This document shows positions 29,600 through 49,430 of a stretch of DNA of 64,000 nucleotides, one piece after another. The notes below the pieces were generated by a model. The model made no database searches. It was not told where the DNA came from and was given only the letters and a program-made list of their open reading frames with translations. The stretch's first letter is position 1, and every line of letters starts with the position of its first letter. Origin of the DNA: Lepidodermella squamata (taxonomy: Eukaryota; Animalia; Gastrotricha); NCBI GenBank assembly GCA_047495785.1, contig JBLDXI010000074.1, positions 310,001 through 374,000 of the forward strand. Reading direction: 5' to 3'. A program made the translations under genes and the position numbers.

Positions 29600-30982
29600 A
29601 TGATCAAGTTTCTACTGTGTTTCACTTGCATTCTCAACCTCTCAGAAGTCAATAGCTCCCAACAGCAGACCTGCGATAACACTCCCATTCAGGTGCAGGA
29701 GCATGACGTTAGCCAGGCTATTTTTGGCGATTCCAAGTACTGGGAGAGACCAGTAAAAGATGCCCGCAAGTCTATCAATGTGCAACTCAAGTTAGGAATA
29801 CTTGCTATCAGCGATATAGTGAGATTCCGCCCCTATGTGAATGACTCAGTTCCAACTTTTTTTGCTTAGAATGAGAAAATGCAGTTGGTTAGCATTAATG
29901 GCTACATCGGCATGGTGAGTCACTTTTGATTTATTATCGTGATGTGTATGACCCAGTTTTTTTTAAATTAGAAATGGATGGATGAAATTCATCGCTGGAA
30001 CGGAACTTTTCCCCTATCATGTGTGGGCAGTCTCGTACTTCCCTACGGTGAGCATACCGGTCTGTGGCTGCCCGAAGTCGCCTTCATGAATGCTGACGAT
30101 GTATATCTGATCACTCGAGACAAGGAAACCTACATACGTATAAATTCAGATGGCAGCAGTAAATTCAGTAGTGCTGGACTTCTATCTTTCCACTGCGACT
30201 TTGATCTCTCGCTTTTCCCGTTCGATACTCAAGATTGCATTGTTCATCTTGAAAGTTGGCGGTATCCACAAACTCATCAGATATTCAAGATCTACGAGCC
30301 AGGCATTGTTATGCAAAACGTAACTCCTCACGAACAGTGGGAGATAGTTCAAACAAGAATTTTAAACCAGACTGTATTATACTCAGATCCAACAGTAACC
30401 TTCGACACTATGAAGTTTCAGCTCAGTTTTCGGCGAAAACCCGGTTATTATACGCTCAACGTGATCGTTCCAAGCTCTATGATTTCGATAATTGAACTAG
30501 CCTCTTTTGCTGCTTCGCCTAAGCGAGTAGAACGTCTGGAAATATCATTCACATGTATGCTAGCTTACGCAATGTTTCAGTCTCTGACTGCCGCTGAAAT
30601 GCCGCACTCAGCTGACCATCCGCCTATGCTCACCATCTACTTGTGCCTGATGACGGTTTACATCGCCGTAGCTATTTTCGCACAAAGTATTTGCTTATTT
30701 CTGCTCGAAAAACGGGCCTACAAACTCAAACTGATCAGGTACTTATGCATGCGGAAGCGTGGTCAAACGAACTCTGGTTTATCGGAACTCTATGCTGAAA
30801 CACAGATAGATGGTTCTACTCAACTTAAGATCGAACACGAGGCGGTTGCGAAAAATATTGCGGCGTCTTTGGTGGACGTAATTGATAAAATTGCATTCTA
30901 CTGTTATTTCGCGACTGTTCTAATCACCACATTGATCTGTTTCATTTTCATCCCTCAATATTACTCATCCGTATCCAAGTAG
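29600..30982 (+). CDS. Cys-loop pentameric ligand-gated ion channel subunit, divergent non-alpha, probably cationic (exons 29600-29818, 29870-29914, 29972-30982)
   Basis: Signal peptide, ERPVKD, LWLPEVAFMN, Cys-loop CDFDLSLFPFDTQDC, ESWRY, RRKPGYYTLNVIVP (M1), ERL..SFT.ML (M2) and DVIDK..F (M4). No vicinal Cys in loop C. Confidence 0.9.
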
Positions 30983-31446
30983 CAGCGCATCAGCATAACA
31001 GCACTAATGCTGCTTTCTGCTTTCTATTCCTATCATAAATCATAACTCAGTCGTATGTGGCCTCTGACATGAATAGTGAAAATCTCTCGCTCACTAACTC
31101 AACTTCAAATATCATGAAAAGGAGTAATTAAACCAAATCTCTCAGTGGAAATCGATTCCGGCACTGTTTCAGTTTTTGAAGATTGAAAAATTTCTGGGAT
31201 CACCTAAGCGCAAGGATTCCACTTTTTAATCGAATTCGCTTTCAAACATGATGAGGTATTTTGAACAATTCTCAATCCTTCATACTGAGTAGATCCCGTC
31301 TTGAGTTTATTATTGAAAACACCTATTAGCTAGTAGCAAAAAGCTTTTTGTTGAAATAAAGTCGAAATACTGATGAGCGATTGTTGTTCTGTAAAGTGAG
31401 AGTATCAATGAACATATTTTCGCAGATGCGGTTCGTAGACGGATAG

Positions 31447-31644
31447 TCACCGTTCAATGACTTGACCGAATTTCGGGTCAGTGCTGGGGACATTCTCAGC
31501 CAATGAGCGGGAGGAAGAGCTGCTTACTGAAGTCTGCTCGTAACCAAAGGCCATGAAAGCGAAGAGAGTCACAATGCCGAGCAGAATGAAGGCGGCGAGG
31601 AGTAAACCGTAGACGTAGATTGTAGCGCTGGCGACCGTGCTCAT
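31447..31644 (-). CDS. Single-TM microprotein family, copy 1 (65 aa)
   Basis: MSTVASATIYVYGLLLAAFILLGIVTLFAFMAFGYEQ...FGQVIER. Confidence 0.8.
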   Translation of the reverse strand: MSTVASATIYVYGLLLAAFILLGIVTLFAFMAFGYEQTSVSSSSSRSLAENVPSTDPKFGQVIER

Positions 31645-31852
31645 TCGAATTTAGACGCTACGGGTAATTTAGAATTAATCCGCGCAAATATTCTAAAACA
31701 GAACAAGTTTATTAATGAGCAAAATGTACGCAAATAACAGTTGATGCAATAGCAAATTGGTTCGAAATTGAAGAAATTCGGCTCGATTGTTTGTCTTATG
31801 TTCCCAATAATCAGTGGACATATTTTCTCAGATGAGGCTCATAGACAGATAG

Positions 31853-32035
31853 TCACCGTTCAATAACTTCACCAAATGGGACTGAGGAAGATGAGCTCGT
31901 CGACGAGGTTTTGCTGACAGAATTTTGTTCGTAGCCGAAAGCCATGAAAGCAAGCAGGATCACTAGACCGACTAGGACGAAGAGTGAAAGAAGCAGGCCG
32001 TAAATATAAACCGTGGAGCTCGCAACTGCGCTCAT
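31853..32035 (-). CDS. Single-TM microprotein family, copy 2 (60 aa)
   Basis: MSAVASSTVYIYGLLLSLFVLVGLVILLAFMAFGYEQ...FGEVIER; the 3' flank resembles that of copy 1. Confidence 0.8.
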   Translation of the reverse strand: MSAVASSTVYIYGLLLSLFVLVGLVILLAFMAFGYEQNSVSKTSSTSSSSSVPFGEVIER

Positions 32036-32257
32036 TTGTTGTATGACCAAGTGCTAAGACGCTAAAAAACTCAGAAAAAAGCGAAAATGAAAAACGAAAT
32101 GCATTTCAAAATTCATAGTTTTACTGTAAGAAATCACAACCCTCATTCCATTAATAAGTTTCGATAAATAATTGGGCACAAGCGATCTAGCATAATTGAT
32201 AAAGTCTTGTATTAAGGTAACTCGTTAAATGACAGGTTTTGACAGGGTGCTCGCAAC

Positions 32258-32389
32258 TCAGCCAGTTCCAAACGTGACCTCTTTATAGCCGAATGCCATA
32301 ATGACAAATAAGACGAAGATTCCGAGCAAGGTGAGTATTGCCATGACTAGTCCATAAACATATACCGCATTCTTGTCGATTGAGCTCAT
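32258..32389 (-). CDS. Single-TM microprotein family, copy 3 (43 aa; not in ORF track)
   Basis: MSSIDKNAVYVYGLVMAILTLLGIFVLFVIMAFGYKEVTFGTG*. Confidence 0.8.
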   Translation of the reverse strand: MSSIDKNAVYVYGLVMAILTLLGIFVLFVIMAFGYKEVTFGTG

Positions 32390-33218
32390 GTCGGCACCGT
32401 TTCGGGTGATCACAAGTAAATAGCAATTAATCTAATCGCCCTATAAGTGTTACACAAATATCATGGTTATGGGAGAAAAATCATCGGGTCAGTTACGTAA
32501 AACTCGGTCATAATTTCTAAACACTGCACAGCGCTGCTCCCTCTCGGTAATGTTTGATCAAAAGGTTTGCTGATCAGCGGTAGCAGTTAACAGGTGATAA
32601 GTGGAGCGTTGCGAAAGACGCTTGATTCTGTGCCGGCCGCGCGCGCACAATAAATACGGAAGCAGTGACGCGCCTTTAAGAGGATAATTACCTGCCACTG
32701 ACGCATATCACAGCTAAAGCAGATCAAAGGCTATAGTTTGTGGTGATTGTCGATGTTTACCTAATAGACTTGGCGAGCAACACGCGCACACTTGGGACGT
32801 CCGATGTTTACCGATCTGCGCAATAATCAGTAATCACTTGACCAAATTGAGTGCTCTTTAGGACGGTGTTACACATGTCCTGGTATGCGCCGGGCACGCG
32901 CTCGGTACTCATGTGTGATATAGCTATTCCTGCCAAGCTTTTGCCACCATTTTCCTTGACGCGACACAAACGATACTTCAAGTATCACACTGGCTCTGGA
33001 CTCACTGAGCATGCTCAAATGATTTCATGTTGTAACAAAATGCAACGCTATTTTAGTACACAAATGTCTTGTTTTTATTTTGTAAACCATGCAAGAATTA
33101 CAACAGAACCAGGTATACAATGATAAGTACTGAAAATTGCACAGGTGATTGAATGATAGCTTGCTGTTTTATAAATTGAACCAGGAATGATGATGAAGAT
33201 TCGACGCGGGGTGATGAG

Positions 33219-33347
33219 TTAACCGCTTGTCGTCGCGCTGTAGTAGCCCATCGCCATGAGGAAGAACAGCAAGATGATACCCGCGATGATGCAGATCGCC
33301 AGAATTAGGCCGTACATATAGACGCAATTCTTATCGACGGATCCCAT
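33219..33347 (-). CDS. Single-TM microprotein family, copy 4 (42 aa; not in ORF track)
   Basis: MGSVDKNCVYMYGLILAICIIAGIILLFFLMAMGYYSATTSG*. Confidence 0.8.
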   Translation of the reverse strand: MGSVDKNCVYMYGLILAICIIAGIILLFFLMAMGYYSATTSG

Positions 33348-33728
33348 TTTTCTCGCTTTCGAAATGTAATTCCTAAGAATATAATGACATGGAAATATAA
33401 ATTATTTTGTCTTAGCTGGACATTCGCCTAACATAGGAAGTCAAAATGCTCGACTAAGGGCGAATGAATTGCCCCGGGTGTTTATAACTGCGGTACATCA
33501 AAGGTAAGGTGTTGAGTCAATACAGGAAACTCGCTCACTGGAGACCTCACGGATTAGCGGCTCATCATTTGGTAATCAAAGAACAAAACGCACCCTTGGT
33601 ACACATATCTCGCCTTTTATTACTGCTTAGGTTGAGCAGATAAAACACATAGGAATGTCAAACAAAAGCGAATTATTGCTGTACAATTAAGTAAATTGGC
33701 TATCAGCTTAGTGTAGATTGGGACATTT

Positions 33729-33989
33729 TCACGCAGCTCCTCCAACAGCTGCTGCGGGCGGGTTCGCGACAGTGTTTGTTAATAACTTGCTCGATTCGAC
33801 ATCGCCGGACATGACAGCATTTTTTATGACGATGTAGCGCTTGGATGTCGTATCGTCATCATCGTTATTTTCGATTTCGATGTAATATCCGATCGCCATC
33901 AGCGTAAACAGCCCCAGTATTGCCACCATAGAAATTACTGAAGCCACCACTCCATACAAGAAAACTGAGTTTTTGCTGACAGTTCCCAT
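33729..33989 (-). CDS. Single-TM microprotein family, copy 5 (86 aa)
   Basis: MGTVSKNSVFLYGVVASVISMVAILGLFTLMAIGYYIEIENNDDDD... Confidence 0.78.
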   Translation of the reverse strand: MGTVSKNSVFLYGVVASVISMVAILGLFTLMAIGYYIEIENNDDDDTTSKRYIVIKNAVMSGDVESSKLLTNTVANPPAAAVGGAA

Positions 33990-34398
33990 TCCTCGATTTG
34001 TCTTTGGGTGTGATTCTGCTAAATTGCGAAAGTGACAAAAGTGCGAACGCACGCTGCACCGAGAAATAGCGCATTGTTTGACGCGTTAAGGTGGATTAAT
34101 TCGTAATTAGACTCATCGCATTCTGCGCATCGCCACTTGTTAGTTCATGGCGTCGACAACCTGGTTTCAGCTAATTATCCAGTTTTTGGTGCGCTTGCAT
34201 TAATTATGAACACTTGACAAGGCGTCAAACTCGACAAGTCAAGCCGCGGACATTTTTCGCATGTTTTATTCGATAAAAACGTAAACAAACGGTTATCATA
34301 GGCTAATTCCGTATTTACAATGTTAGACCCATTAGTTCTGAAAATTTTAGATGATAATAGAGTTGTCGAATGATAATATAGAGATGCTCGATATCCAG

Positions 34399-34783
34399 TT
34401 AACCAGTCGACGTAGTCGCGTAGTAGTATCCGAACGCTGAAAAATCAAGATTGATCTGTTATTGTGATGTGTACAGACATTCGTTATAATGGATGCGCTA
34501 GAAGACTCATAACAGAAAGGTTTCACGTTGGAATGTCCCATAATCGGTATATCGATGGAAAATCCTTGCCCATTCATTGGGAACTTACCCATGACGAAAA
34601 ATAGAATCGCGATTCCGACAAAAATAACCTGTTCAATGCATTTAAAATAATTGTAGTTCACAAATGAAAGAATCTTACAATAGCGAGGATGAGAGCATAC
34701 AGGTACACTGTTAAAGCATATTGGTAGACTGTAATGGTGTAAAGTGCTTCACACTTACCGGTGTTTGTAGTGATAGTTCCCAT
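34399..34783 (-). CDS. Single-TM microprotein family, copy 6 (43 aa; 4 exons 34783-34759, 34707-34679, 34628-34589, 34436-34399)
   Basis: Removing three GT-AG introns (51, 50, 152 nt) gives MGTITTNTVYLYALILAIVIFVGIAILFFVMAFGYYYATTSTG*, colinear with the unspliced paralogs. Confidence 0.8.
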
Positions 34784-35307
34784 TTCGATGTGATGACTTC
34801 TGTAGGAAATAGCACTCAAAAATGGCAAATTTTCTCGAGAGCCGCAAAACAGCGCAAATGAAGGGCGCGCTCTTCCGCTCGAGAGTCATTTCACAACGTT
34901 ACAATGAACGCCTCTAGCATCGAGGCGTTAATGTAGCAGGAGTCGCGTTGTTTCGTGTCAATAGATAACGCTCGCTAACGCCACTCGAGTGACAGTGATT
35001 ATTTGCCAACAACAGGTAGTAATGACAGAACAATTAATTATATTACGAGTGCGCCGTTTCGCGTAACCTGCTCCCGCTTCTCCTGATAGAAGCCGAAATC
35101 GCCAGCGTCAAGCCGCTTTGGCTCGCCGAGCGCAACCTTAAAAGTTTGACGCTTCGGAACCCAATACATCCTCATTACCAGTATTTTGCGTTTATTTCAA
35201 GTTCAGAATTGGCACAAGATAGATAATTGCACAACCTTAAGTATAAATTATTGCATGGTAAAAGCGTTTTGTTTAAAGAGGTTCGGCGGGTGGGTTTATC
35301 CAGAATT

Positions 35308-35430
35308 TTAGGTGGTGATTTGCAGGTAGGCGAATCCCATTAGGAAGAATAGAACGGCGATGCCGAGGAAAACTATTACTGCTAGGACGAGGCCGTAGAT
35401 GTAGATCGTGTTCTTGTCGATGGATCCCAT
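35308..35430 (-). CDS. Single-TM microprotein family, copy 7 (40 aa; not in ORF track)
   Basis: MGSIDKNTIYIYGLVLAVIVFLGIAVLFFLMGFAYLQITT*. Confidence 0.82.
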   Translation of the reverse strand: MGSIDKNTIYIYGLVLAVIVFLGIAVLFFLMGFAYLQITT

Positions 35431-35512
35431 GTTTCGTAGGTAGATTAGTCTGAACTTTAGCTTATTATGAACCTAGTTTAAATAATCGTTAAGAGTTAGC
35501 GCCAGTCATCTT

Positions 35513-35629
35513 TTAGCCGCTGCTATTTGAGATGATGAGCAAGACGAAAAAGACAATGATTCCCACGACAGCTAATACGCCCACGACTAGGCCGAAAGTG
35601 TAAATGGCATTGCTGTCGACAGAGCCCAT
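35513..35629 (-). CDS. Single-TM microprotein family, copy 8 (38 aa; not in ORF track)
   Basis: MGSVDSNAIYTFGLVVGVLAVVGIIVFFVLLIISNSSG*. Confidence 0.75.
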   Translation of the reverse strand: MGSVDSNAIYTFGLVVGVLAVVGIIVFFVLLIISNSSG

Positions 35630-36708
35630 TTCATCACGTATTGAAACAGGTCTAAAACAGTTTTGACAGTATTTTATATCGCGGTGAGAGACGCTTGCCT
35701 GAAGGTACCTGAAGGGCCCACAATATTTTGTTAATTGGATAGCAATATTTTCCTATCTACCAGGGAGCATCCGGTCAAGGACATCGGTAATCAAACAGAC
35801 GTCGAGACACGCGATATCGATTTCCTCACAACAAATAAGATGGGATCAAATTGTAAATACAGGAAGTGGTCAGTATTCCATCTGAAATCCTCCCGAGGGA
35901 AACATGTTTTCCCAACTCGTTTCAAATAATATGCAGAGCCGAGTAATACTGATAGCTGCAAGACTTCTACGTCAGAGTCCGATTGTGGACGACAAAAAAC
36001 TCGGATGGTTTGTTGCATTTCACAGTAGCTTGCTAATTGCTATTCAAGGCGGTGATTATCCGGTTTAGTGGTTTTCAAGTAGCGTGAAATGTTATTGTTT
36101 TGGATAATGAGTGACTACAAATGCCGATTATTTTTAAGGCGTCGTTTGCTTTACCGTTGGTTGCAACACCAATCAAGTGGCGTCTTGTGGAGTAAAGGTG
36201 ACCCAGTTGCATTGGAAAAAGTGATTATCTGCATAGTATTTTTGTGGCAGTGTTCGCAGTTGATTGAAATCATCTACGTCGATTTGATACAATGCATGAG
36301 ACGAACGGCACTTTTATCTCACGTAAGTTGAGCCAAGCAGTTCCAAACCGCAATCTTCATGGAGTTTACCTCGTATGAGTTGCTGATTTATTGGTTTTAA
36401 GAATCGAATTTTCAGCTGTTTAGCAAGAGTTGGGAAATCTTCTAATTGAGAACTGCCTCGTCAATTTGATCGTGGCCGCGACTTCGAATTTTGAGCTATG
36501 CCAAGGTTATGAAACCGCAGGGATTATTACACGAGTACTTTTCAAAACGCTTCTTGTTTTATTCAGCGAAATGATCCAATGAATGTTTGCTGGAAGCATT
36601 TCGTAGATGACTTCTAAGAGCTAATAATACCGGTGTAAAACCAAAAATTTTATTGTAATAAGTTGAATAAAATTGGGAGGGTCAAAAGTTCTAATCGAAA
36701 GATTTCTC

Positions 36709-36882
36709 TCAGCGCCCATCAAAAACGACAGGAGTTGGTGTCGTAGTAGCCATCGGTTGATTTTCTGGTACTTGCAAATAGCCGATCGCCATCAGAACGA
36801 ACAACGTCAAAATGCCCAACATTATGATGATTGCCAAGACAAGACCATAGACGTACACGGCATTCTTATTGACCGATCCCAT
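36709..36882 (-). CDS. Single-TM microprotein family, copy 9 (57 aa; not in ORF track)
   Basis: MGSVNKNAVYVYGLVLAIIIMLGILTLFVLMAIGYLQVPENQPMATTTPTPVVFDGR*. Confidence 0.82.
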   Translation of the reverse strand: MGSVNKNAVYVYGLVLAIIIMLGILTLFVLMAIGYLQVPENQPMATTTPTPVVFDGR

Positions 36883-37780
36883 GTTATCTGAAATCCAGCG
36901 GAGAAGTCATTATCGAGAAAGAAGTAAAATAGGTTAATTTACCTGGAGCTTTGGAGGGTTTCAAGTTCCGTGGTTACCTCTTGAGCCGATTTACCTTTTG
37001 AATGGGCAGAATAATTGCGGTGATTAAGTAGAAAATAGCGCATGTAATGGCGCCCACTTGACGATACGTTATTGTAAGAAACGCCGCGTGATTTTGCGTG
37101 GTACACCCGAGTAATAACCATTTAGCATCATCATTAATAGATGGCAATCGACTATGATACCCGGTTTTGCGCATTGTTTTTGCCAACATCAAAACGGGAC
37201 GGGCAAGCGTGGCCCCCATTCATATGTCACGCTTAACAGGCCCTTTGTTTTACGAGCGCTACTAATTCTCCCTGTTTTTGTTAATGCTAGACATGGCGGG
37301 CGAAAAAGCGCCTCTTTGGCGATCAGCCATTTAGTAAGACAGGAGAACGCATGTCAATGGTAGGCGTGTTGCCAAATAGGTTGAGTCAACAATCAATTGT
37401 TGTTTGCTTTGCCATCACCATTGTTCAACAGGAACCACAATGACTTAATCCACCAAGTAAACGTTTTTTTCTCACCTGAACGCGTTTTCTGGTTCCGTTG
37501 CCGCGGAAAAAACTGATTAAGCTTATCAAGATTGACGCATTCAACAGTCAACACAATTTACTTGGCTTCTCGATTTTATTTTGCCCGAAAAATCTGAACT
37601 ATAACGAACACAATAATAATACGTGAACAGCAGTGGACTTTTCACCAAAATCAGATGAAAAATGAGTCTTCGAAGGAAGTTTTGAGGCTCTGGTTTCAGG
37701 CAGGATCTGAAGTAAAAAAGTGGATTGATACCAGGAGAAACGGAACGTTGTTGTGAAGATGATGCTGTCTGATTGACTTG

Positions 37781-37912
37781 TTAACCGCTGTTCGAAGTTC
37801 CGATGTAGGCGAATCCGATTAGCACAAATAGTGCTATCATCATTAGGAAGATGATTATGGCGAGGACCAAGCCGTAGAGAAAAATGGAGTTCTTATCCAC
37901 TTGCCCGCTCAT
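37781..37912 (-). CDS. Single-TM microprotein family, copy 10 (43 aa)
   Basis: MSGQVDKNSIFLYGLVLAIIIFLMMIALFVLIGFAYIGTSNSG*. Confidence 0.8.
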   Translation of the reverse strand: MSGQVDKNSIFLYGLVLAIIIFLMMIALFVLIGFAYIGTSNSG

Positions 37913-38707
37913 TACTGTGGATAACAGCCTACTAAAATTTGAAACAAAATGGTAAAACAGTAATTTCAGCCACAAATATGCACCTTAGATAAATTAAGAG
38001 AGATCTGCTGCGTTCTGGTGGTACAATGCGCTAGCGAATCCTATCTCAGCGTCGCCTCTCAGCTGACAACAAGTCAAAGCTTCAAACATGATTTTATTTA
38101 CCGCAGCACTCGCAAGTCTGTCAATCGACTTGAGTGTGCCTTGTTCTGGGACGTTTGTAGAGAAGCGTCGGCCAGGAACGCGATACGGGCCTCTTAATCG
38201 CTCATTTTTGTTAGCTGGTAATGCGTGCGCGATTATTCCCCGTTAATGTTTACTTAGCGCACATGATACGCGGTAGATTAACACGCTCGCCCCAAGGACA
38301 TGTCCCTTTGAATACAACGAAAGACAAAACTGACTATCGGCACAAACGTAACAAAATCGAAAAATTGCTCACAAAAGGGCAGCTGGGATTTGATAACTAA
38401 GCATCCAGTACTGTTCCTTATAGTAATCTGGAGCCAGGAGTCTTCGTGTCCAAAAGCCTTGCCAACACCGCCAATATCTCGCTATTCGGTAAGAGTCCAA
38501 GAAACAAGAAACTCATGGTTAAAAAGCCTTCCTTTATTCTTTCATCAGTAAAAATTTAATTCAGTTGAAAACGGATATTTCGCATATAAGGATAACTGAG
38601 CATTTTGAGCATGATATAATACTGGCACATGATATGATATGAATTAGGAATGTCTTTGTTTGCTGCTTCCGCTGGTTTTTGTCGCAAATTTGCTGCAGCG
38701 TTGTGTT

Positions 38708-38929
38708 TCAGAAAGCTTGGCCCGTTTTTTGGAAGTATCCGATACCTGTAACGTGAACGACGCATTAGTTTAACTTTCTTTGTGGATTTTAAAATTGTTA
38801 CGTAGCTGACATGGGAAGTGCTATGGGCCGCTTACCTAGCATGAAGAAGAGTACGGCTATTCCGAGAAACACGATCACCGCAAGTACGAATGTGTATATT
38901 GCGATTGTAGTGTAAGACAGCGATCCCAT
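38708..38929 (-). CDS. Single-TM microprotein family, copy 11 (43 aa; exons 38929-38836, 38745-38708)
   Basis: MGSLSYTTIAIYTFVLAVIVFLGIAVLFFML|GIGYFQKTGQAF*; the 90-nt intron is at the same codon and phase as intron 3 of copy 6. Confidence 0.75.
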
Positions 38930-39114
38930 TTATCAACCCGTGCCAGATTAGGTTCTGCAGATTAATATGTCAGGGGTAAAGACGGGATCAGAGGAGATGG
39001 GGTTGAAACCGAAAATCCTGTACAGAAAATCCTATAAAGACAGGGTAACTCAGTTATTACCGAAATTGGGAATGTTAGTCAAGTGAAAGGTTGCATGGGG
39101 TTATTAGAAAAAGC

Positions 39115-39299
39115 TCAAGTTGAAGATGTTGTGGCTTGGAAGAAGCCGATGCCCATCAGCAGGAACAAAATCGCAATTCCTGGAATAAAATCGTGTGCAA
39201 GTTCCGCATTTCACTCAAGTCGAAAAATTTACCGAAAAATATGATTGCGGCAAGGATCAATCCGTAGATCCAGATGACGTTCTTGGAAATCGTGCCCAT
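39115..39299 (-). CDS. Single-TM microprotein family, copy 12 (43 aa; exons 39299-39233, 39179-39115)
   Basis: MGTISKNVIWIYGLILAAIIFF|GIAILFLLMGIGFFQATTSST*; 53-nt GT-AG intron. Confidence 0.8.
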
Positions 39300-40114
39300 T
39301 ATTGGCGAGAGATTAAACTCCAATTATCGAGGCTCACGACAAATGTAGCCAAGTGATGAAAGCAGACGGAGCTTATGTCCGGCAATTATTTAGTGTCTTG
39401 TGATGATATTAGGAAACGCTGATTGACACTTGTCCGGCGAACAAGCGTCAAGTTACCAAGCAAGAGCTTGTCCATTCTTTACAAATGACAGGCCGTAATC
39501 TGATGCGTTTTCTTCATACAACATGTCCACGCCCGTTTTTCGCCCGCTCATGTTAGCTACTCTTCATTTTCTCTTTGTTCGTTGCGCCATTCATCGGTTT
39601 CATGACTGCGTGTTTACCTGGCGAAGCGTCGTTATGTTATCTTAGCAATATTTTGACAAATTACGCTCTGCAAACACGCATGGTAACGCTGAGGTGATTT
39701 TTACCGGTGTCATATCAAGGCGCCTTTTGTTTTTGTCACTCTTTCATTATTATCTGTTGCTGTGATTGTTGGCACCTCGTAAAATCAGTGTTGACTTCTG
39801 TGTGTTTACGCAAGCATTATACCAAACCGTATATACCGATCGGCGCGTCCATTTTCAAGATGCGCGTGCGATTGGCGTTGTTTTCCGGCCGCACGACTGC
39901 AAACCGGAGACGCCTTTTAACACGTTTCCGGTTTTGTTTTTATCGTTTTTGCCACTGTATTCACAAAAGGCGTTCCCCTTTTTATTGCTCCTCCTACCGC
40001 GCTACTTCTTCACAACCCAGTTTTTACCTCTCGCCGACAACTTCGCTTCCGAAAACGCAGGTAAGCTTCCGATTATTTTTGGTACTTCGAGAATTAGAGA
40101 CATCTTTTTCAGGC

Positions 40115-40333
40115 ATGTCTGTTGGAACGCGCGAAGTCCTGATCTATTCCTTCATCCTCTTGGTTGTGATATTCCTCGGTATCACTGTCGCTTTCGTTCT
40201 CATGGGAGTGGGGTTTTTCAACAGCAACAGCTCGTCCCTCTCGAGGTCACTAACCCTAAGCGGCGCACCTCCGCAAATCTCGCCTACCGCCTTCATCCCA
40301 AACGGACCGCCAAACTACTTCCTGCAGGGCTGA
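40115..40333 (+). CDS. Single-TM microprotein family, copy 13 (72 aa; inverted orientation)
   Basis: MSVGTREVLIYSFILLVVIFLGITVAFVLMGVGFFNSNSSS...; preceded by a 52-nt GTAAGC..TTTCAG intron (40061-40112). Confidence 0.72.
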   Translation: MSVGTREVLIYSFILLVVIFLGITVAFVLMGVGFFNSNSSSLSRSLTLSGAPPQISPTAFIPNGPPNYFLQG

Positions 40334-41187: not shown

Positions 41188-44100
41188 TCATGAGTTCTGC
41201 ATGGTTTCTAAAAATAGCAGTTGATCCACGAGAAAGGCGTCGTGGGTGTTGCCGAGCATGCGTTTAAGGTCGTTTGAAATGCGCTGCTCATTGTTGTCAC
41301 CGCCGTTTGACGATCGCGCATCCTTAAGGTAGTCGTAGACTTGGCGGAATTTAACCGGCCCCAACTTGCGCTCACAGTCATTTCTCATCGCCTTGATTTT
41401 AGATTGGCGGGCCTGCGGTCCAAAAGCTCGCGATGTATCCTCATCGACAAAAGTCATACTCCGATCTGAAAATCATGAAAAATGTCAAATGAATGTATGT
41501 TAAGGTTGATATTGAATTGATTGATTGATTGATTGAATTGAATTGAATTGAATTGATATTGAAGGAAAGGAAAGGAAAGGAAAGGAAAGGAAAGGAAAGG
41601 AAAGGAAAGGAAAGGAAAGGAAAGGAAAGGAAAGGAAAGGAAAGGAAAGGAAAGGAAAGGAAAGGAAAGGAAAGGAAAGGAAAGGAAAGGAAAGGAAAGG
41701 AAAGGAAAGGAAAGGAAAGGAAAGGAAAGGAAAGGAAAGGAAAGATGAAAATCGTAACTAACTTGGCATTGAGGGTCGGGTGAGAACTGTAGCCATGTAA
41801 TTAGCCAATTCAGTTCGATCATCTTCTTGATGAATAGGACCGTCATATTGACCCTCCTGTGCGACAAAGCGAATCCGTTGTTGCTTCCCACTATTCGCAA
41901 AACCCGGGAGGTTTCTTGACCCAGACGCAGCTCTAGGATTGAATGACTGGCTAACCATAGGCTGGCCACCGTTTGACGCTTCCGAATCTTCGAATTCATC
42001 GTAGTACGAGTAGTAGTAATCAGCGATTTGAGGATTAACCGGGATGCCGTTTTGAAATTCCAACTCTTTCGAGGCATCCTTGTATACGTCCTTTTTCATG
42101 GGCGTGATAGGCCGATCGTCGCGTTTGGTGGGCCCGACGGATCGCGATAACAGGTCGCCTTCGCCGAGGAAGCTGTGGCGTTTCGGGTGATCAGGGTGCT
42201 CGACTGAATACTCGACGCTGTATTCGACCTGGTTAGGGCCGTCTTGTGAAATGACGACAGACTTTCGAGGGGCTTGGAGAGATGTCCCTTGCACAGAATC
42301 GCGAATGCCATCTTTCATCGCTTTTTGCGTAATATATGTCTCATGGGTAACTTGCCTGTGGGGAAAGGAAAGAGTAAATAAAAAAATGCAGACGATTTTT
42401 CAAGCAAATTCAAATTGAAAATTCAAGCATATGTCTAAATTCTCTCCAAGGAAAATGAGAAAAAATTAGTTCAGCCAATTTTTGAATGAGGATTAGCTCG
42501 AAATTCAAATAATTTTCCCAAAAATTTACTTTTTCAAAATTATTTGGTACGCTGTAAATTCCCCGAGTATGTGGCGTTTATTTTAAGATTATTGCAATAA
42601 ACCCGTTCGAGAAAAATTACAAATTAAATTTTTATATTTTTTTAGTACGTACACTTTATTTTCACTAACTTTTCAGTTTAATTTAAATTTTCAATAAAAT
42701 CTTGATAGAAATTTGGGGCTTTTAACATAATTTTCCAAATTTTGAAATTTTATGAAATTTACTTCAAGGCATGGGCCTTTCTGTCCGCCTCGCTCCGTTT
42801 CCGAAGCAGCATCTGCTGTTTGGGCGATAGGTTGTTCAATCCGAACTCGCGCTCTGCCTCTTTCGCCTGTCGATACTCCTCCTCCTCGGCCGCAGCGGCT
42901 GCCGATGAATCATTCTCGGTTGAAGTATTGGGGCTAACACGTCGGATCGTGCCCGATGCCTGCGGTAGCTGTTGAGACTTGTTGAGCTGGTCGGACGTCT
43001 CGTAAGACGCTTTAAACCCAGCGTTTTCCCTCGTTTGCTTCAGCGACCGCCTGAAAAACGAGTACGATAGACGGCGATCAATAATTTGTTTATACGCGAC
43101 GCCTCACGCGCCTAAATTGTTATACTTCAAAAAGAGCTACGCCTTGAATAATTAAACGCATACTTCCGCGCACAGTGACAAACTGGCTGTTAAAACTAAC
43201 AAGTAAACAACGGCGCACGGACGCTATTCCGCTCAGGGTGTGCGAAAAATAATAAACTCACAAAAATTCGGCCTCGGCAGCCGCGATATCCTCAGCGTTG
43301 GGTGCTGGGTTTGTGGACGCTTTCACCGACATTTGGGTCGGCTCACGCTTCACAGCGCTGGGAGCTTTGATAGTACTGGTCGCGGTCTTCAAACGCGGAG
43401 TTTTCGCCGCCTGAACAGGGCCTGCTGCTGACTTATTCCCGGCAGGAGCAGCAGGAACTTTCTTAGCTGTTCCGGGCGTAGCTTTACTGCCGGATGACGG
43501 CTTTTCGGCAGGGGGCTCGACCACAGTCACAGATTTAGCTTTGACTGTACCGGAAGCCTCAGCTTTGATTGTACCTGCTGAGGCTGGTTTAGCTTTTACT
43601 GTCGCATCGTTGCCAGTTACCGGTTGAAGAGTTGAATTACCGTCCTGTGGCTGGTCTGATGTACTGAATCCCATTGTCCGCCGTAAATCCTCTAAATGGG
43701 CAGGTTCATTTCTGAATAAGGCAAAATGCGCGGCATTGCATTGTCGAGAATTAATGGCAAAATTACTAACATCAACTGTGAAATATCTCGAGCCTCCTTC
43801 TCTAATTGTTCACTGGAAGTTTTCTGGCTTACGGCAGCGCCACCGGTCTCGAGCTGGCTTTTTAATCTCTCAATTTGGGCAGACATGAATGGAATTTGCA
43901 ATATTTCACTTGCTGAAGGTCTCTTGTGTATGTCACGTGTCAATATTCTGAAAAACATTAATTCTAAATTCAAGTCTGTACGATTCGAAAGTTCGACTTA
44001 CTTCAAGTAAATGTCATTCAGTTCCGGAGAGTATCTCGACGGCAACTTAGGAATTTCGCCTTCTACGATTTTGTACATAACACCCATCAAGCCTTGCCCC

Positions 44101-45366: not shown

Positions 45367-48300
45367 TCAGGATCAGGATCAGGATCAGGAATTACGATTT
45401 CTCCTCGCCCTGACGGACTCAAGCTTTCGCCATAAGGCGGAGCTTGTGAGAAAATCGCGAGCTTACGCTCTAGGAAAGTTTGAACTGGTTTACTAACTAC
45501 TTGATTGAAATCCCTACCCCTGGTACTCCAGTTATTGCTGACTGTTTCTCCAGGGCCCAGGCATTAGTGCCCAGGTGGCTTTTCCACTCACTCAGCGAAG
45601 CCTACAACGCCGTCGTAGCAAGAAAGCTACCAAAAGACTAGTTGGAGAATTATTTACAAGAGTAGAGATAATTTACAAGAGGTAATTCCACGGAGCTAAA
45701 ATATAGATAATTTAATGACGGAGCTATAAAAGAAAATAAAGTATATTACATTTGGTTGAGTATAGGCTTTTGAAAAATATAAATAGAAATTTGGAAAACT
45801 CATTTAGTTTGGCACGTAGTTGTAGACGAAGGCGGCTTTGGAGTACGGATTGAACGCGACCTGCGGCTGCAGAGAGGCGTTGAGTTCCTTCTTCTTTCGC
45901 TCGCTCTTCACCTTGATGATGGCGTCGTGTTTGGCCTGTTCGCGTAGGAATTCGAGCGTGGCTTGCCGGCACGCCTTTGTGGAAGCGGACAGCCTGATCT
46001 TCGCTGGCAGCTGGTTCCACCACTGGATAGCCTTGGTTGGGAACGAGCGCTGGCCTGTGGCGAGCTTGCACGATGGTTTGACGTACTTCCCGGTGGCGGC
46101 GCCTCGAGTGTTGTGGTCATGCTGTTGGTTCATCGGCTTGACTAGCGACGAGAGTGCCTCGGGGGTCTCAGGATCCCTGCTGCACTTCCACATGGTTGTA
46201 GCCAGGTGGACCAGTCGTTTGCCTTGCAGATTCACCCATCGCAATCGCACGAGAACTTCATCGGCGGGCACGTCAGGACTGACGTCGAGAACGGCACGAA
46301 CGGCTTTGTTTTGCGCGTGTTGAAGTCGATCCAGCTGGGTCTTGCAGCCCTGATCGATGACGGCGTCGCAGTAGTTGAACTTCGACCCGATGATGCCGTC
46401 GTACATCATTGTTCGAGTCTTCAGGTCGGTGTGCCGAGCCGCTTTACGTAGTGCGTAGGTACCACTTCTTGCGGCTTTGATCAGATGATCGACGTGCTTT
46501 TCCATGGTGAGCTTTGAGTCCAGATAGACTCCCAGGATCTTTACGTGGTCAAGTGGCGGCAGATCGACTTCACCGAATCGAATTTCTGGAGCAGAAGCCT
46601 GTTGGTTAGACAAAAACATATAATTAGATTTGTCCCGATTCACTTTAAGACAGTTGGCGTGTAACCAATCGCCGATACTGCGAAGGTCCGCCTCTAGCTT
46701 CGCCTTGACTTCTTCAGGCGTCTTCCCACGGGCCACGATCGTTGTGTCGTCGGCGAACAGCGATGCGATGCTGTTTTTGCATTGAACTGGCAATTCGTTA
46801 ATGAAAATGATGAAAAGCAGTGGGCCGAGGATCGAGCCTTGTGGGACGCCGTACGTGATAGGCGCGATGTCTGAGATCTCGGTAGGCGTTTTCACGCGCT
46901 GAGAACGGCCTTCTAGGTAGGCGCGAAACCAAGCTATTGCAGCGTCGTCGAGGCCGGCAGAGCGAAGAGCAGATATTAGGCCTTTAATAGGCAGGGAGTC
47001 GAACGCTTTGCTTAGGTCGATGCATACCATTCCGACGCATTCACTGTTGTCCAGTGCCTTTCGGCAATCGTCGAGAATTTTAAGTAAGCATGACTCGCAG
47101 CTGTGGCCAGCTCGAAACCCGAACTGATTCGCTTTGAGAAAACCTATTCGTTTGAGGTAAGTTTTCAATTGACCGCTGAGACAGCGCTCCAGCAACTTCA
47201 GCAGACACGATGAGATGGAAATCGGTCGGTAGTTTGAAGGAATCGTGTGATCACCAGATTTGTAGATCGGAGTGACCGTCGACTCAAGCCAGGTGGTAGG
47301 TAGTTTTCCAGTCTTGATGGTTAGGTTAAACAGAGTCGCTAGACATTCGCTCATTTCAGGGATCACTAGCTTCAGGACGTTGTTTGGTATACCATCGGGA
47401 CCGGTAGTTGACTTGTTGTTCATTCGATCAACCTGTTCTTCGATTTTCTTCTTTGTTATGCAATTGAAGGAGAAACGCCACTCTGGCCGTGGTGGTGGTC
47501 GGCTGAAATCAGGTGACTTTGTTTCGGCAGCGATTTTCTGTCCAACAGCGGCGAATGCATCGTTGAGAACATTTGCGGCTATCGGAATGGTGTTTTCGCC
47601 TGGTGGTGACTTGTCGGTTAGGAACTCTCGCAGAACCTCCCATATTTTGCGGCTGTTCCCACGAGCCTTGGCCATCCGCTTTTGGTAATGACCATAGATG
47701 AATTGCCTAGATTCCCGGCGATGATCTTTATTCAAGGCCTTCAGTTTGGCTTCGTCTTCTTCCGAGAACGGACCAACACTTTTCTGACGCAGGAGCCTGT
47801 TTCGCTGGATTGACAGATTTATGAGGGCTCTTGATGGCTTTGGCAGACCACCTTCACGCTTTTCTGTTGTTTTGACCTGTACCTCAGGGGCGTGACGATC
47901 GAGCAACTGAATGAAGGAGTCGGTGATGCGGTCTGCGTAGCTGTCAACATCTTCATCTGCCTTTTGAATCGGCCAACTGATTGTCGAGGCGTCCTTTAAG
48001 AACGCTTCCGTGTTGATCTCGTTTAGCTTCCTGGTAGTGCGGAAGACCGTTGTTTTCTTTTCAGGCTGTTTCTTCAGTTCTAGAGGGAAAGAACAAAATA
48101 CACCAAGGTGGTCACTAAAAGGCTCATACGTTCCGGACGTAGACGTTTCGATCGAATCAGACAGCCAGATGTGATCGAGGCAGCTGAGCTTGGTTTTCCC
48201 ATAGCGAGTGACGGGACAGTCAGGCAGACCAAGCTTGAGCTTCGCACCCTCAAACACAGCTTCGAGAGCAAGCTTTACTGGGCTTTGGCGCAGGTCGTAG

Positions 48301-49430
48301 TTGAAGTCGCCCCCAATAATGATTCGATCTCCATTGGCCTTTTCGGTGAGCTTGTCGGTGAAAAGTTCCAGATCGCCAATAGAACAGTCGGTCGTGCGCG
48401 GGTTGTAGACAGCGCCAAGGATTAACTTTCCATGCTTCGACTCGACAGATACGACTAGCTTTTCAAGCAGTGGCAGATTCGTGATGGATAATCGCCTTAC
48501 TTTGTGAAAAGACTTTTTCATAAGAATAGCAACACCGCCGCCATTTTCACCCCTCACTTCACGGCACGACCATTCGGATCGGTAACCTTCATTATAAAGC
48601 GAGGAGGTGATGTACTTAGGTATTGCTCCGTCACGTAGCTTTGTTTCGGACAGAAAGACGATGTCTGGCTTTACCGTCACGAGAAATGTCAGCAGCTGAG
48701 CAAACTTCTCCGTTGTTTCGAGGCCGTTCATGTTAAAGTGAAGGACCAGGAGACTTGATCTGCCCAGGGCGATGAGATCGTCGATTGAGTGGCTGAAAGC
48801 GTTTGGTAGTGGTGTCGGTGACAGAGATGATGCAACGGACGTCATGTCTGGTGACGGCGGAGGCTCATCACACGGCGTTTCGGGTATCAACAAATCAGCG
48901 TACGTCAGTTCTGGTGACGGCGGCTGTTCGTCGACTGGCACAGGTGTTTCTATAAAAATATTAGATTTCTGCTTCTGGCCTTGACAACTTTTTCGATTGC
49001 AGAACCACAGATGTCCATCGTCGCCATAGACTTCCCAATGGTGTGGGGCGATACCAGCGCACTCAGCGTGAAACCAGCGCTTGCAATGGGAGCATTCGAT
49101 GGTAAATTGCTCTTCAATGCTTACTGGTTTCCAGGTGTCCTTTTTGCAAGTACCACAGGGACATGGTGCTTCCTCTGGAACACAGCTGGTGGTTGGCCGT
49201 TTCTGCGCAGCAGAGCGGGAATCGCGAGCCGCAGTTTCGCCCTGAGAAGAGCGCCTTGCTCGCAGAGTCGATTTCGACTTTGGAGGTTGTGAATCGCGAA
49301 GATTGTTGCTCGCTTTGCGATCGAGTTCGGCAGCAAAGCCAGAAGATAGCCCAGAAGACAGTTGAGCTCTTCTTCTAGTTAACATGAAGTGGATCCTTCG
49401 CCTCTCAAAAGGGGTGCCCGGCCGATGATA
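45367..49430 (-). mobile_element. Apparently intact CR1/L2-group LINE with a single ORF (PHD finger, APE endonuclease, RT; probable start 49385, stop 45804), 3' stem-loop and (TCCTGA)4 tail
   Basis: PHD: CPCGTC..IECSHCKRWFHAEC..WFC..C. Endonuclease: HFNMNGL, LSETKL, GGGVAI, GGDFN, CLDHIW, SDH. RT: YRPISI, QFGFR, DLSKAFD, GVPQGSILGP, LFADD. About 1200 aa with no stops; tcagga x4 at 45367-45390. Confidence 0.95.

What the first reader, a model, noticed from the sequence alone, without database searches (positions are those of the whole stretch)
31447..40333. Tandem array of 13 paralogous single-pass membrane microproteins of no recognisable family
Seen: 12 minus-strand ORFs and one plus-strand ORF of 38-86 aa share the consensus M(G/S)(S/T)(I/V)xKNx(I/V)YxYGL(V/I)LAxxxxLGIxxLFxxM(A/G)(F/I)GY. 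Each has a short polar N-terminus, one ~26-residue helix with conserved Y12/G13/A17/G23/F28/M31/G34, and a variable S/T-rich tail. The core aligns essentially without indels although the DNA has diverged, and three copies only read through after removing canonical introns, which argues for real genes under purifying selection. Eight are absent from, or only partly shown in, the ORF track and would be missed by standard annotation. Established: single-helix micropeptides of this size (FXYD, phospholamban/sarcolipin/sarcolamban, KCNE, yeast PMP1) regulate pumps and channels. The GLxxAxxxFxG spacing loosely recalls the FXYD helix, but there is no FXYD motif or signal peptide. Inference: an undescribed, locally expanded family of membrane regulators or homo-oligomerising peptides, possibly deployed combinatorially by cell type.
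Basis: partly seen in the sequence, partly recalled or inferred. Interest (0 to 1): 0.92.

Follow-up and report, generated by a model that had tools for sequence, protein, structure and literature searches.

The report
Conserved array of tiny membrane-protein genes
Thirteen neighbouring mini-genes in an unidentified invertebrate each encode a roughly 40-residue protein that is little more than one membrane-spanning helix; they are transcribed, kept by selection, matched gene-for-gene in a related species, and belong to no described family, so they are real but their job is still unknown.

Summary
A profile built from the intact copies finds 13 copies, all inside 31447-40333 and none elsewhere in the 64 kb (12 minus strand, 1 plus strand). 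Three copies (c10, c11, c13) need canonical introns of 50-152 nt removed. One of these introns appears as a spliced joint in a cDNA run.

They are real genes.
- A related species, known only from metagenome contigs, has a collinear array of 9 copies with matching orientation, conserved flanking genes on one side and conserved intron positions.
- Non-synonymous differences are far fewer than synonymous ones, which are saturated (pooled Fisher p = 2e-41; c12 dN/dS about 0.09).
- Between the two arrays, only 201 nt of about 9.6 kb still align, all of it coding.
- Eight of 12 minus-strand copies have AATAAA 100-175 nt after the stop (P = 4e-6).
- cDNA covers four copies.

No family matches in Pfam, NCBIfam, PDB sequences, the ESM Atlas or an exhaustive HMM search of 1.84 billion representatives. 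The FXYD, regulin and KCNE tests fail.

Best reading: independent, ancient, sub-functionalised single-pass microproteins. They probably sit N-in/C-out and act through one conserved helix face by packing against a partner membrane protein. That mechanism is inferred, not shown. The duplications are old, not a recent local burst.

The parts
31447..31644 (-). c1, single-exon CDS, 65 aa (helix plus S-rich tail of about 30 residues)
   Evidence: HMM E = 2e-19; cDNA contigs cover 31300-31693 while neighbouring c2 has none; AATAAA 136 nt after the stop
31853..32035 (-). c2, single-exon CDS, 60 aa; sister of c1
   Evidence: HMM E = 5e-17; c1/c2 clade 99/98; pN 0.21 against pS 0.83, Fisher p = 1e-13; AATAAA at +140
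32258..32389 (-). c3, single-exon CDS, 43 aa
   Evidence: HMM E = 7e-21; positional orthologue o3 in L006
33219..33347 (-). c4, single-exon CDS, 42 aa
   Evidence: HMM E = 1.5e-21; positional orthologue o4 (P0003, 45 aa), dN/dS 0.25; AATAAA at +140
33729..33989 (-). c5, CDS 86 aa as read straight through (acidic tail; the tail model is unverified)
   Evidence: HMM E = 2e-16; AATAAA at +108; no orthologue seen in L006
34399..34783 (-). c13, four exons 34783-34759, 34707-34679, 34628-34589, 34436-34399; 43 aa
   Evidence: All three introns are GT..AG; the 51-nt intron 34758-34708 appears as a cDNA joint 34707->34759 with ends CT..AC on the plus strand; the position of intron 2 is shared with o13 in L006; AATAAA at +129
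35308..35430 (-). c6, single-exon CDS, 40 aa
   Evidence: Best HMM hit, E = 1e-22; cDNA depth about 11; orthologue o6 is 39 aa with its stop at the same place; AATAAA at +112
35513..35629 (-). c7, single-exon CDS, 38 aa; only 82 nt upstream of c6; divergent C-terminal end of the helix
   Evidence: HMM E = 7e-16; cDNA depth about 16, with nearly continuous cover across the c7-c6 spacer; no poly(A) signal before c6; long branch in the tree
36709..36882 (-). c8, single-exon CDS, 57 aa (T/P-rich tail); putative 55-nt 5'UTR intron at 36942-36888
   Evidence: HMM E = 3e-22; AATAAA at +55 and +146; the 5'UTR intron is inferred only from a GTAAAT..TTTCAG pair in the upstream sequence; no cDNA in the one run laid
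37781..37912 (-). c9, single-exon CDS, 43 aa
   Evidence: HMM E = 6e-18; positional orthologue o9 is very diverged (29 % identity)
38708..38929 (-). c10, two exons 38929-38836 and 38745-38708; 43 aa
   Evidence: GTAAGC..TTACAG intron of 90 nt; the intron position and the 12-codon second exon are conserved in o10 of L006; c10/o10 are 68 % identical, pN 0.18 against pS 0.96
39115..39299 (-). c11, two exons 39299-39233 and 39179-39115; 43 aa
   Evidence: GTAAAT..TTCCAG intron of 53 nt, phase 1; same intron position in o11, which uses a GC..AG intron; 68 % identity to o11
40115..40333 (+). c12, the single inverted copy, CDS 72 aa with a conserved 37-residue tail; putative 52-nt 5'UTR intron at 40061-40112
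   Evidence: HMM E = 5e-14; orthologue P0001/o12 is 80 % identical over the core and shares the tail through to the C-terminus, dN/dS 0.09; clade 100/99; the 5'UTR intron is inferred from sequence only

Best explanation
The region holds 13 separate, very small protein-coding genes of one previously undescribed family. Each product is a single-pass membrane microprotein. It has an initiator Met followed by a small residue, a polar stretch of about 7 residues (typically with Asp/Ser-Lys-Asn), and one helix of 26-29 hydrophobic residues bracketed by Tyr/Phe at both ends. A short tail follows, uncharged and S/T-rich or acidic, usually 0-9 residues.

Shown here: the genes are real. Four are transcribed, one intron is seen spliced, most have their own poly(A) signal, the family is under strong purifying selection, and the array is old and syntenic between two species.

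Inferred: most products are too short for the helix to leave the ribosome before termination, so they should insert post-translationally like tail-anchored proteins. The only conserved basic residue lies before the helix and the longer tails are acidic, so the likely orientation is N-terminus cytosolic, C-tail outside or lumenal. Conservation follows the alpha-helical period and marks one face (G13, A17, I24, L27/F28, M31, G34/Y35).

I therefore think they work by packing that face against transmembrane helices of a larger partner such as a pump, channel, transporter or receptor. The paralogues would serve as partner-specific or tissue-specific accessory or regulatory subunits, in the manner of FXYD proteins, regulins or KCNE but unrelated to them.

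My odds: about 0.9 that these are functional membrane-microprotein genes, and about 0.4 that the accessory-subunit mechanism is right.
For: Existence and number.
Gene models with canonical introns.
Transcription and splicing. A cDNA run with SMART adapters gives patchy cover over c1, c13, c6 and c7 only. A 51-nt GT..AG joint sits exactly at the predicted c13 intron.
Own 3' ends: AATAAA lies 100-175 nt after the stop in 8 of 12 minus-strand copies, against a 10 % background (P = 4e-6), with 13 against 4 strand bias in the array.
Selection: pN 0.18-0.24 against pS 0.73-0.96 in the four clear orthologue pairs; pooled Fisher p = 2e-41; codon-position differences 0.49/0.32/0.67 over all pairs.
Synteny: a collinear 9-copy array in the related species, with kinase (82 %), GT6 and SUGCT (80 %) alongside. 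Intron positions are shared. Between the arrays only 201 nt of about 9.6 kb align, all coding.
Antiquity of the paralogues: the two species interleave in the tree.
Structure: one helix over residues 5-39, pLDDT 90.
One-sided conservation: the power spectrum peaks at 100 degrees; 134 of 5000 shuffles reach it.
Charges and tails.
Against: No partner is known and no interaction was tested.
The helical-face signal is modest (p about 0.03).
The charge bias is weak (usually +1/-1 before the helix), so the topology is not secure.
Only four of 13 copies have cDNA support, from one small run stored as short assembled contigs. There is no translation or proteomic evidence.
The neighbouring Cys-loop receptor gene, a tempting partner, is not found beside the array in the related species within the 4.8 kb available.
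The family was found in only two species, so conservation depth is limited.
Confidence: 0.55

Rival explanations
1. The peptides act on the membrane itself as homo- or hetero-oligomers: small pores or channels, viroporin-like or type-I-toxin-like peptides, or immune or antimicrobial effectors. They would not be accessory subunits of another protein.
For: Small-residue positions (G13, A17, G23, G34) recur along the helix and could equally drive self-association. Tandem multigene arrays are typical of effector families. A weak sub-threshold match of one copy to a bacterial type I toxin model (E = 0.15) reflects no more than the shared hydrophobic design.
Against: The peptides have no signal peptide or amphipathic design, and the helix is uniformly hydrophobic with no polar lining residues. 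One-to-one orthologues with dN/dS of 0.1-0.3 and stable gene order are unlike arms-race effector families.
Confidence: 0.17
2. They are extremely diverged members of a known small-subunit family, such as SERCA regulins or sarcolamban, FXYD, or a small subunit of OST, V-ATPase or a respiratory complex. Sequence methods cannot recognise such members at 40 residues.
For: The overall design (short N-terminus, one helix, short tail, about 40 aa) resembles regulins. Sarcolambans are known to vary greatly in sequence (bioRxiv 10.1101/2020.07.19.211243). One copy has a faint FXYD-family match (E = 2).
Against: No hit to any such family in Pfam at E <= 10 apart from that one noise-level match, and none among PDB chains at E <= 10. 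The Trp-Leu-Leu element described for SLN and sarcolambans is absent (Trp occurs in 1 of the 21 peptides scored, WLL in none). There is no FXYD motif and no basic cluster after the helix. Known small subunits are usually single-copy, not 9-13 ancient paralogues.
Confidence: 0.1
3. The array is one complex transcription unit rather than 13 genes. A shared promoter or leader exon would be spliced (in cis or by a spliced leader) to alternative ORF-bearing terminal exons, or several ORFs would sit on polycistronic RNAs.
For: Pyrimidine-rich AG acceptor-like sites lie 15-50 nt upstream of many ATGs in both species. Twelve copies share a strand with gaps of only 82-1079 nt. cDNA cover runs nearly continuously across the 82-nt c7-c6 spacer, and c7 has no poly(A) signal of its own.
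Against: Most copies have their own well-placed AATAAA. c1 is covered at depth about 12 while adjacent c2 and c3 have none. c8 and c12 appear to have complete mini-introns in their own 5'UTRs, implying local first exons. No joint to a distant leader was seen, although the run is small.
Confidence: 0.12
4. The ORFs are non-functional: remnants of a repeat or transposon, or chance hydrophobic ORFs.
For: They are very short, and unannotated small ORFs are common.
Against: All 13 copies are intact. Synonymous sites are saturated while protein identity between orthologues is 66-80 %. DNA similarity is confined to the coding cores, both within the array and between species. Splice sites and stop positions are conserved.
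Confidence: 0.02

Closest known systems
SERCA regulins (phospholamban, sarcolipin, myoregulin, DWORF; insect sarcolamban)
   Same: They are 28-52 aa with no signal peptide: a short cytosolic N-terminus followed by one helix near the C-terminus. They were missed by annotation as small ORFs, and they act by packing one helix face into a groove of a pump. Several tissue-specific paralogues exist.
   Different: No sequence or profile match. The Trp-Leu-Leu element and the in-helix Asn are lacking. Many copies here have tails of 20-50 residues after the helix. The helix is 26-29 residues, longer than in the regulins. There are 9-13 ancient paralogues in one array rather than dispersed single genes.
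FXYD proteins (Pfam PF02038, ATP1G1/PLM/MAT8)
   Same: Both are single-pass accessory subunits with conserved Gly/Ala positions in the helix and an aromatic-rich motif at its outer end. Both are multi-paralogue families with tissue-specific use. The G-L-x-x-A...F spacing is loosely similar.
   Different: The best Pfam score is 8.3 bits (E = 2) against a cut-off of 26.9, in one copy only. There is no F-X-Y-D motif, no signal peptide or extracellular N-domain, and no Ser-Arg-Arg basic cluster after the helix. The likely topology is the opposite one.
KCNE (MinK-related) channel subunits and yeast PMP1/PMP2 proteolipids
   Same: These are single-helix modulators of a channel or a P-type ATPase, and PMP1 is also about 40 aa.
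   Different: No match in Pfam or PDB. KCNE proteins are more than 100 aa with glycosylated N-termini. None occurs as a large tandem array.
Tail-anchored membrane proteins (a biogenesis class, not a family)
   Same: There is a single hydrophobic segment, no signal peptide, and at most about 30 residues after the helix in most copies. The total length is short enough that insertion must be post-translational.
   Different: The cytosolic part is only about 7 residues, so unlike typical tail-anchored proteins there is no functional cytosolic domain. A few copies (c1, c5, c12) have tails of 30-49 residues after the helix.

Membership tests
FXYD (PF02038) | Match to the family profile above the Pfam gathering score | tested here: not met
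   Nine copies were scanned. Only c6 appears, at E = 2 and 8.3 bits against a cut-off of 26.9.
FXYD (PF02038) | F-X-Y-D motif N-terminal to the helix, and a basic Ser-Arg-Arg-type cluster just after it | tested here: not met
   No copy has the motif; the nearest element is Y-x-Y-G. The 15 residues after the helix carry 0-2 basic residues, at most 1 in every copy except c5, and no cluster.
Regulins / sarcolamban (PLN, SLN, SclA/B) | Sequence or profile similarity to phospholamban, sarcolipin or related chains | tested here: not met
   No such family appears in Pfam at E <= 10. No PLN or SLN chain appears among PDB sequences at E <= 10 with the family profile.
Regulins / sarcolamban (PLN, SLN, SclA/B) | [quoted passage not shown] | tested here: not met
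   Of the 21 peptides scored, one has a single Trp and none has WLL; o3 stopped the script but has no WLL in the sequence. Tails of up to 49 residues follow the helix (paper read).
Regulins / sarcolamban (PLN, SLN, SclA/B) | Binding to and modulation of SERCA | not testable with these tools
   This needs co-reconstitution or co-expression assays.
KCNE / ISK_Channel (PF02060) | Match to the family profile | tested here: not met
   It is not among the Pfam matches at E <= 10 or the PDB matches at E <= 10.
Tail-anchored protein class | No signal peptide, and a single hydrophobic segment within about 30 residues of the C-terminus | tested here: met
   17 of the 21 peptides scored have at most 30 residues after the hydrophobic run, and 14 have at most 9. 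There is a single predicted helix over residues 5-39. c5, c12 and o12 exceed the limit.
Tail-anchored protein class | Post-translational insertion (GET/TRC40, EMC or SND) with the N-terminus in the cytosol | not testable with these tools
   This is inferred only from length and charge distribution.
Any described protein family | Significant hit in Pfam, NCBIfam, PDB sequences, the ESM Atlas, or a named protein in large sequence collections | tested here: not met
   (best Atlas score 0.76). In some searches, every hit is an unnamed peptide from the same locus of one related species.

The most novel reading that the evidence does not exclude
This is an independently evolved system of single-helix accessory or regulatory subunits. 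It would be analogous to FXYD proteins or regulins but unrelated to them and restricted to a poorly sampled animal lineage. At least nine ancient paralogues are kept in fixed order, and each would tune a different membrane pump, channel or receptor, or the same one in different tissues. In a genome that earlier scan notes describe as having expanded and unusual Cys-loop channels, the partners could be those channels.
Probability: 0.35. Interest if true: 0.75.

Novelty: new variant of a known kind. Interest (0 to 1): 0.62.

Why it matters
Single-helix microproteins are an under-annotated class. The few that have been studied (regulins, FXYD, KCNE) turned out to be key tuners of pumps and channels. 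Here a whole family of 9-13 such genes would be missed by standard annotation. It is shown to be transcribed, spliced and held under strong purifying selection, with one-to-one orthologues across species. That makes it a clean, testable case of a lineage-restricted microprotein system. It also provides a ready set of natural variants for asking how one transmembrane helix face encodes partner specificity. Finally, tiny multi-exon genes exist (c13 has 43 codons in four exons), which is a warning for small-ORF prediction pipelines that consider only uninterrupted ORFs.

Tried and rejected
1. Pfam, NCBIfam, PDB-sequence and ESM-Atlas searches returned only sub-threshold hydrophobic noise, with a different family for each copy.

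2. A word-indexed search of 5.8 billion proteins (twice) and an exhaustive HMM search of 1.84 billion representatives returned only peptides from one related species' locus.

With the tightest subgroup it scanned the JGI metagenome contigs and returned one locus, L008. That locus is a bacterial lipoprotein signal peptide with a lipobox and was rejected as a chance match.

4. I considered that the peptides derive from, or mimic, the M4 helix of the neighbouring Cys-loop receptor, because both contain I-D-K followed by hydrophobic residues. I rejected this: the family profile does not hit that ORF at E <= 10 in the six-frame scan, and the adjacency is not seen in the related species.

5. I considered N-myristoylation of the Met-Gly start. 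It is unlikely to be general. Only 8 of the 13 window copies and 4 of the 9 L006 copies start Met-Gly, and the preferred Ser/Thr at position 6 is replaced by Lys (recalled consensus, not tested).

6. I considered that the hydrophobic stretch is a signal peptide. I rejected this because it is 26-29 residues long and most copies would be left with a mature peptide of 0-9 residues.

7. The repeat or transposon origin was rejected. Self-comparison shows similarity only in the coding cores.

8. Naming the organism failed. The SUGCT neighbour is 48-55 % identical to orthologues from many animal phyla, with no close named relative, and a literature search for the metagenome sample id found nothing.

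9. Literature searches for a described family of this kind found nothing relevant.

10. A fold search was not run, because a single helix gives meaningless matches.

11. The adapter-bearing cDNA ends at 31629 and 34788 could not be interpreted as true 5' ends. One lies inside the c1 CDS.

Full report
**Observation**

The ORF list for 30.5-41.5 kb already shows a series of short ORFs with a common design. I built a profile HMM from 11 intact copies and ran it against all 2647 six-frame stop-to-stop segments of the window. It returned 11 complete copies (E = 5e-14 to 1e-22) and two copies split between frames. All lie inside 31447-40333, and nothing outside scores below E = 0.1. Twelve are on the minus strand. 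One, c12, is on the plus strand at the right-hand end.

**Gene models**

Three copies are interrupted by canonical introns.
- c13 has four exons (34783-34759, 34707-34679, 34628-34589, 34436-34399) with GT..AG introns of 51, 50 and 152 nt.
- c11 has a 53-nt intron.
- c10 has a 90-nt intron.

After splicing, each regains the family consensus and encodes 43 residues. Nine of the 13 products are 38-43 aa. The other four carry tails and are 57-86 aa. The 208-aa plus-strand ORF at 39707-40333 is mostly spurious. The c12 CDS starts at 40115, and the orthologue agrees only from that Met onward.

**Transcription**

One RNA-type run (X1) and one DNA-type run (X2) held the stretch. X1 carries SMART cDNA adapter sequence at loose ends, so it is a cDNA library.

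Its contigs match at 99 % or more and cover only short islands:
- c1 with its 3'UTR (31300-31693, depth about 12);
- c13 (depth 0.5-2.8);
- c6 and c7 (35240-35633, depth 11-16);
- a weak patch at 36.0-36.4 kb.

c2, c3, c4, c5 and c8 have none. A joint 34707->34759 skips 51 nt with ends CT..AC on the plus strand, which is GT..AG on the coding strand. This is exactly the first predicted intron of c13.

Patchy cover centred on the ORFs, together with a spliced joint, argues for RNA rather than contaminating DNA. The caveats are that this is one small run stored as short assembled contigs. Absence of cover for the other copies therefore proves nothing, and the adapter-bearing ends cannot be taken as true 5' ends.

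**3' ends**

An AATAAA lies 100-175 nt after the stop in 8 of the 12 minus-strand copies. The chance rate on that strand of the array is 10 % (binomial P = 4e-6). The array has 13 AATAAA on the coding strand against 4 on the other. Most copies therefore carry their own polyadenylation signal.

c7 is an exception. It sits 82 nt upstream of c6 and has no signal of its own, and the cDNA contigs tile almost continuously across the spacer. c7-c6 may be one dicistronic RNA.

**A second species**

Protein searches found only unnamed peptides from ENA metagenome assemblies. Their contigs (L001-L007) all represent one locus of one organism with about 38 % GC. The 24-kb scaffold (L006/L007) holds nine copies in the same order and relative orientation as the window: the inverted c12 orthologue first, then orthologues of c11, c10, c9, c8, c6, c13, c4 and c3.

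Beyond c12 the same neighbours follow in the same order: an 89-aa ORF (65 % identity), a protein kinase (82 %), a GT6 glycosyltransferase (34 %) and SUGCT (80 % in its N-terminal part). On the other side, the Cys-loop receptor and sulfatase of the window are not found within the 4.8 kb available.

The intron positions of c10, c11 and c13 (its second intron) are shared with the orthologues. Two of the orthologues use GC..AG there. The 12-codon second exon of c10 is conserved through to the stop. The stop positions of c6/o6 (40 and 39 aa) and c10/o10 (43 and 43 aa) coincide.

**Selection**

Nei-Gojobori counts were made on the codon alignment. The four clear orthologue pairs give pN = 0.18-0.24 against pS = 0.73-0.96, which is saturated. 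The one pair with a calculable distance, c12/o12, gives dN/dS = 0.09. Fisher tests on N and S differences give p between 4e-8 and 2e-16 per pair, and 2e-41 pooled. The within-window pair c1/c2 behaves the same way (p = 1e-13).

Over all 231 pairs, the codon positions differ at rates of 0.49, 0.32 and 0.67. At the DNA level, only three short segments of the two arrays still align, 201 nt of about 9.6 kb, and all lie in coding cores. Within the window, self-similarity is also confined to the cores.

These are therefore old, selectively maintained coding sequences, not a repeat. In a maximum-likelihood tree the two species interleave completely (7 label changes, as many as in shuffles). c12/o12 (support 100/99) and c10/o10 (88/73) pair up. 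c1 and c2 form a window-specific pair (99/98) next to c3/o3. Most duplications therefore predate the species split. With only 38 columns, the deeper forks are unresolved.

**What the products look like**

AlphaFold2 on the family alignment gives one helix over residues 5-39 with mean pLDDT 90. In the 21 peptides the script scored, the hydrophobic run is about 27-36 residues. It is bracketed by Tyr10/Tyr12 and Tyr/Phe35. Every one of the 22 peptides has a small residue (G, S, T or A) after the initiator Met.

The N-terminal stretch usually carries one Lys/Arg and one Asp. The 15 residues after the helix carry 0-2 basic residues, at most one in every copy except c5, and are acidic in the long-tailed copies (c5 +2/-6, o9 0/-4). 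Tails are S/T-rich.

Column conservation along the helix has its strongest periodic component at 100 degrees. Of 5000 shuffles, 134 reach that power. This places G13, A17, I24, L27/F28, M31 and G34/Y35 on one face.

**How it most likely works**

The following is inferred, not shown.
- A 40-residue protein whose helix ends 0-9 residues from the C-terminus cannot expose that helix before translation ends. Insertion should therefore be post-translational, as for tail-anchored proteins (established knowledge of that class).
- The lone basic residue before the helix and the acidic or neutral tails favour an N-in/C-out orientation by the positive-inside rule, though only weakly.
- A long helix with aromatic belts, conserved small residues and a single conserved face is what one expects of a helix that packs against other transmembrane helices.
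- One-to-one orthologues with low dN/dS and unequal cDNA cover among the copies fit sub-functionalised paralogues.

I therefore favour accessory or regulatory subunits of larger membrane proteins, at about 0.4. Self-assembling oligomers or pores follow at about 0.17, and unrecognisably diverged members of a known small-subunit family at about 0.1. On gene architecture, a single complex transcription unit remains possible at about 0.12. Acceptor-like sites precede many of the ATGs, but the separate poly(A) signals and the isolated cover of c1 argue against it.

**Comparison with known families**

- No Pfam family reaches its threshold. The best values are E = 0.004-2, each copy hits a different family, and the FXYD model scores 8.3 bits against a cut-off of 26.9 in a single copy.
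- NCBIfam gives nothing.
- The family profile finds no phospholamban, sarcolipin, FXYD or KCNE chain among 177,635 PDB sequences at E <= 10.
- The best ESM-Atlas feature score is 0.76, below the level of a lead.
[quoted passage not shown] They are absent here.

The family thus resembles these regulators in design but is not a member of any of them.

**Organism**

The SUGCT neighbour is clearly metazoan but only 48-55 % identical to orthologues from vertebrates, molluscs, arthropods, tardigrades, nematodes and cnidarians alike. Introns of 50-90 nt are typical here. The animal belongs to a poorly sampled lineage, and I could not name it.

**Verdict**

The claim of real, selected genes of an undescribed family is supported. 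The array is ancient rather than a recent local expansion, and the function remains an inference. Earlier notes of this scan on the same genome describe unusual, expanded Cys-loop channels. That is a lead for possible partners only, and I did not test it.

Noticed in passing
window 45804-49484 (-): There is an intact 1226-aa ORF of a LINE-type retroelement with PHD finger, EEP endonuclease and reverse transcriptase domains. It lies between the kinase and the GT6 gene. In the related species those two genes are only about 700 nt apart, so this is a lineage-specific insertion.
   Followed up: partly
window 35431-35512 (-), between c7 and c6: Only 82 nt separate the c7 stop from the c6 start. c7 has no poly(A) signal of its own, and cDNA contigs tile almost continuously across the spacer. 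This may be a dicistronic micro-ORF transcript.
   Followed up: partly
L006 7625-7687 and 2217-2279: In the related species the introns of the c13 and c11 orthologues begin with GC (GCAAGT..CAG), where the window's copies have GT. These are conserved intron positions with a GT-to-GC donor change.
   Followed up: no
window 40061-40112 (+) and 36888-36942 (-): Apparent mini-introns of 52 and 55 nt (GTAAG/GTAAA ... TTTCAG) end 2-5 nt before the start codons of c12 and c8. Pyrimidine-rich AG acceptor-like sites lie 15-50 nt upstream of many other copies in both species. They could be 5'UTR introns or trans-splice acceptors, and no read evidence is available.
   Followed up: no
window 29978-30982 (+): A 334-aa ORF encodes the C-terminal half of a Cys-loop receptor ligand-binding domain plus transmembrane helices (Neur_chan_LBD, E = 4e-19). 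It sits next to the array but is not found beside it in the related species.
   Followed up: partly
window about 41600-41900 (-): A coding-looking microsatellite gives a pentapeptide unit (F-P-F-L-S) repeated about 14 times inside the 41454-42077 ORF. It is probably a 15-nt tandem repeat rather than a gene, and there is no Pfam match.
   Followed up: no
window 57169-58371 (+): The SUGCT (CoA-transferase family III) gene reads as one uninterrupted 400-aa ORF. The best named animal orthologues are only about 50 % identical, which shows how isolated this lineage is.
   Followed up: partly
window 31409-36346, run X1: Several 'opposite strands' joints in the cDNA contigs (for example 31409/31521 and 35191/35284) look like hairpin or chimeric artefacts of the library or of the assembly. 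I gave them no biological reading.
   Followed up: no
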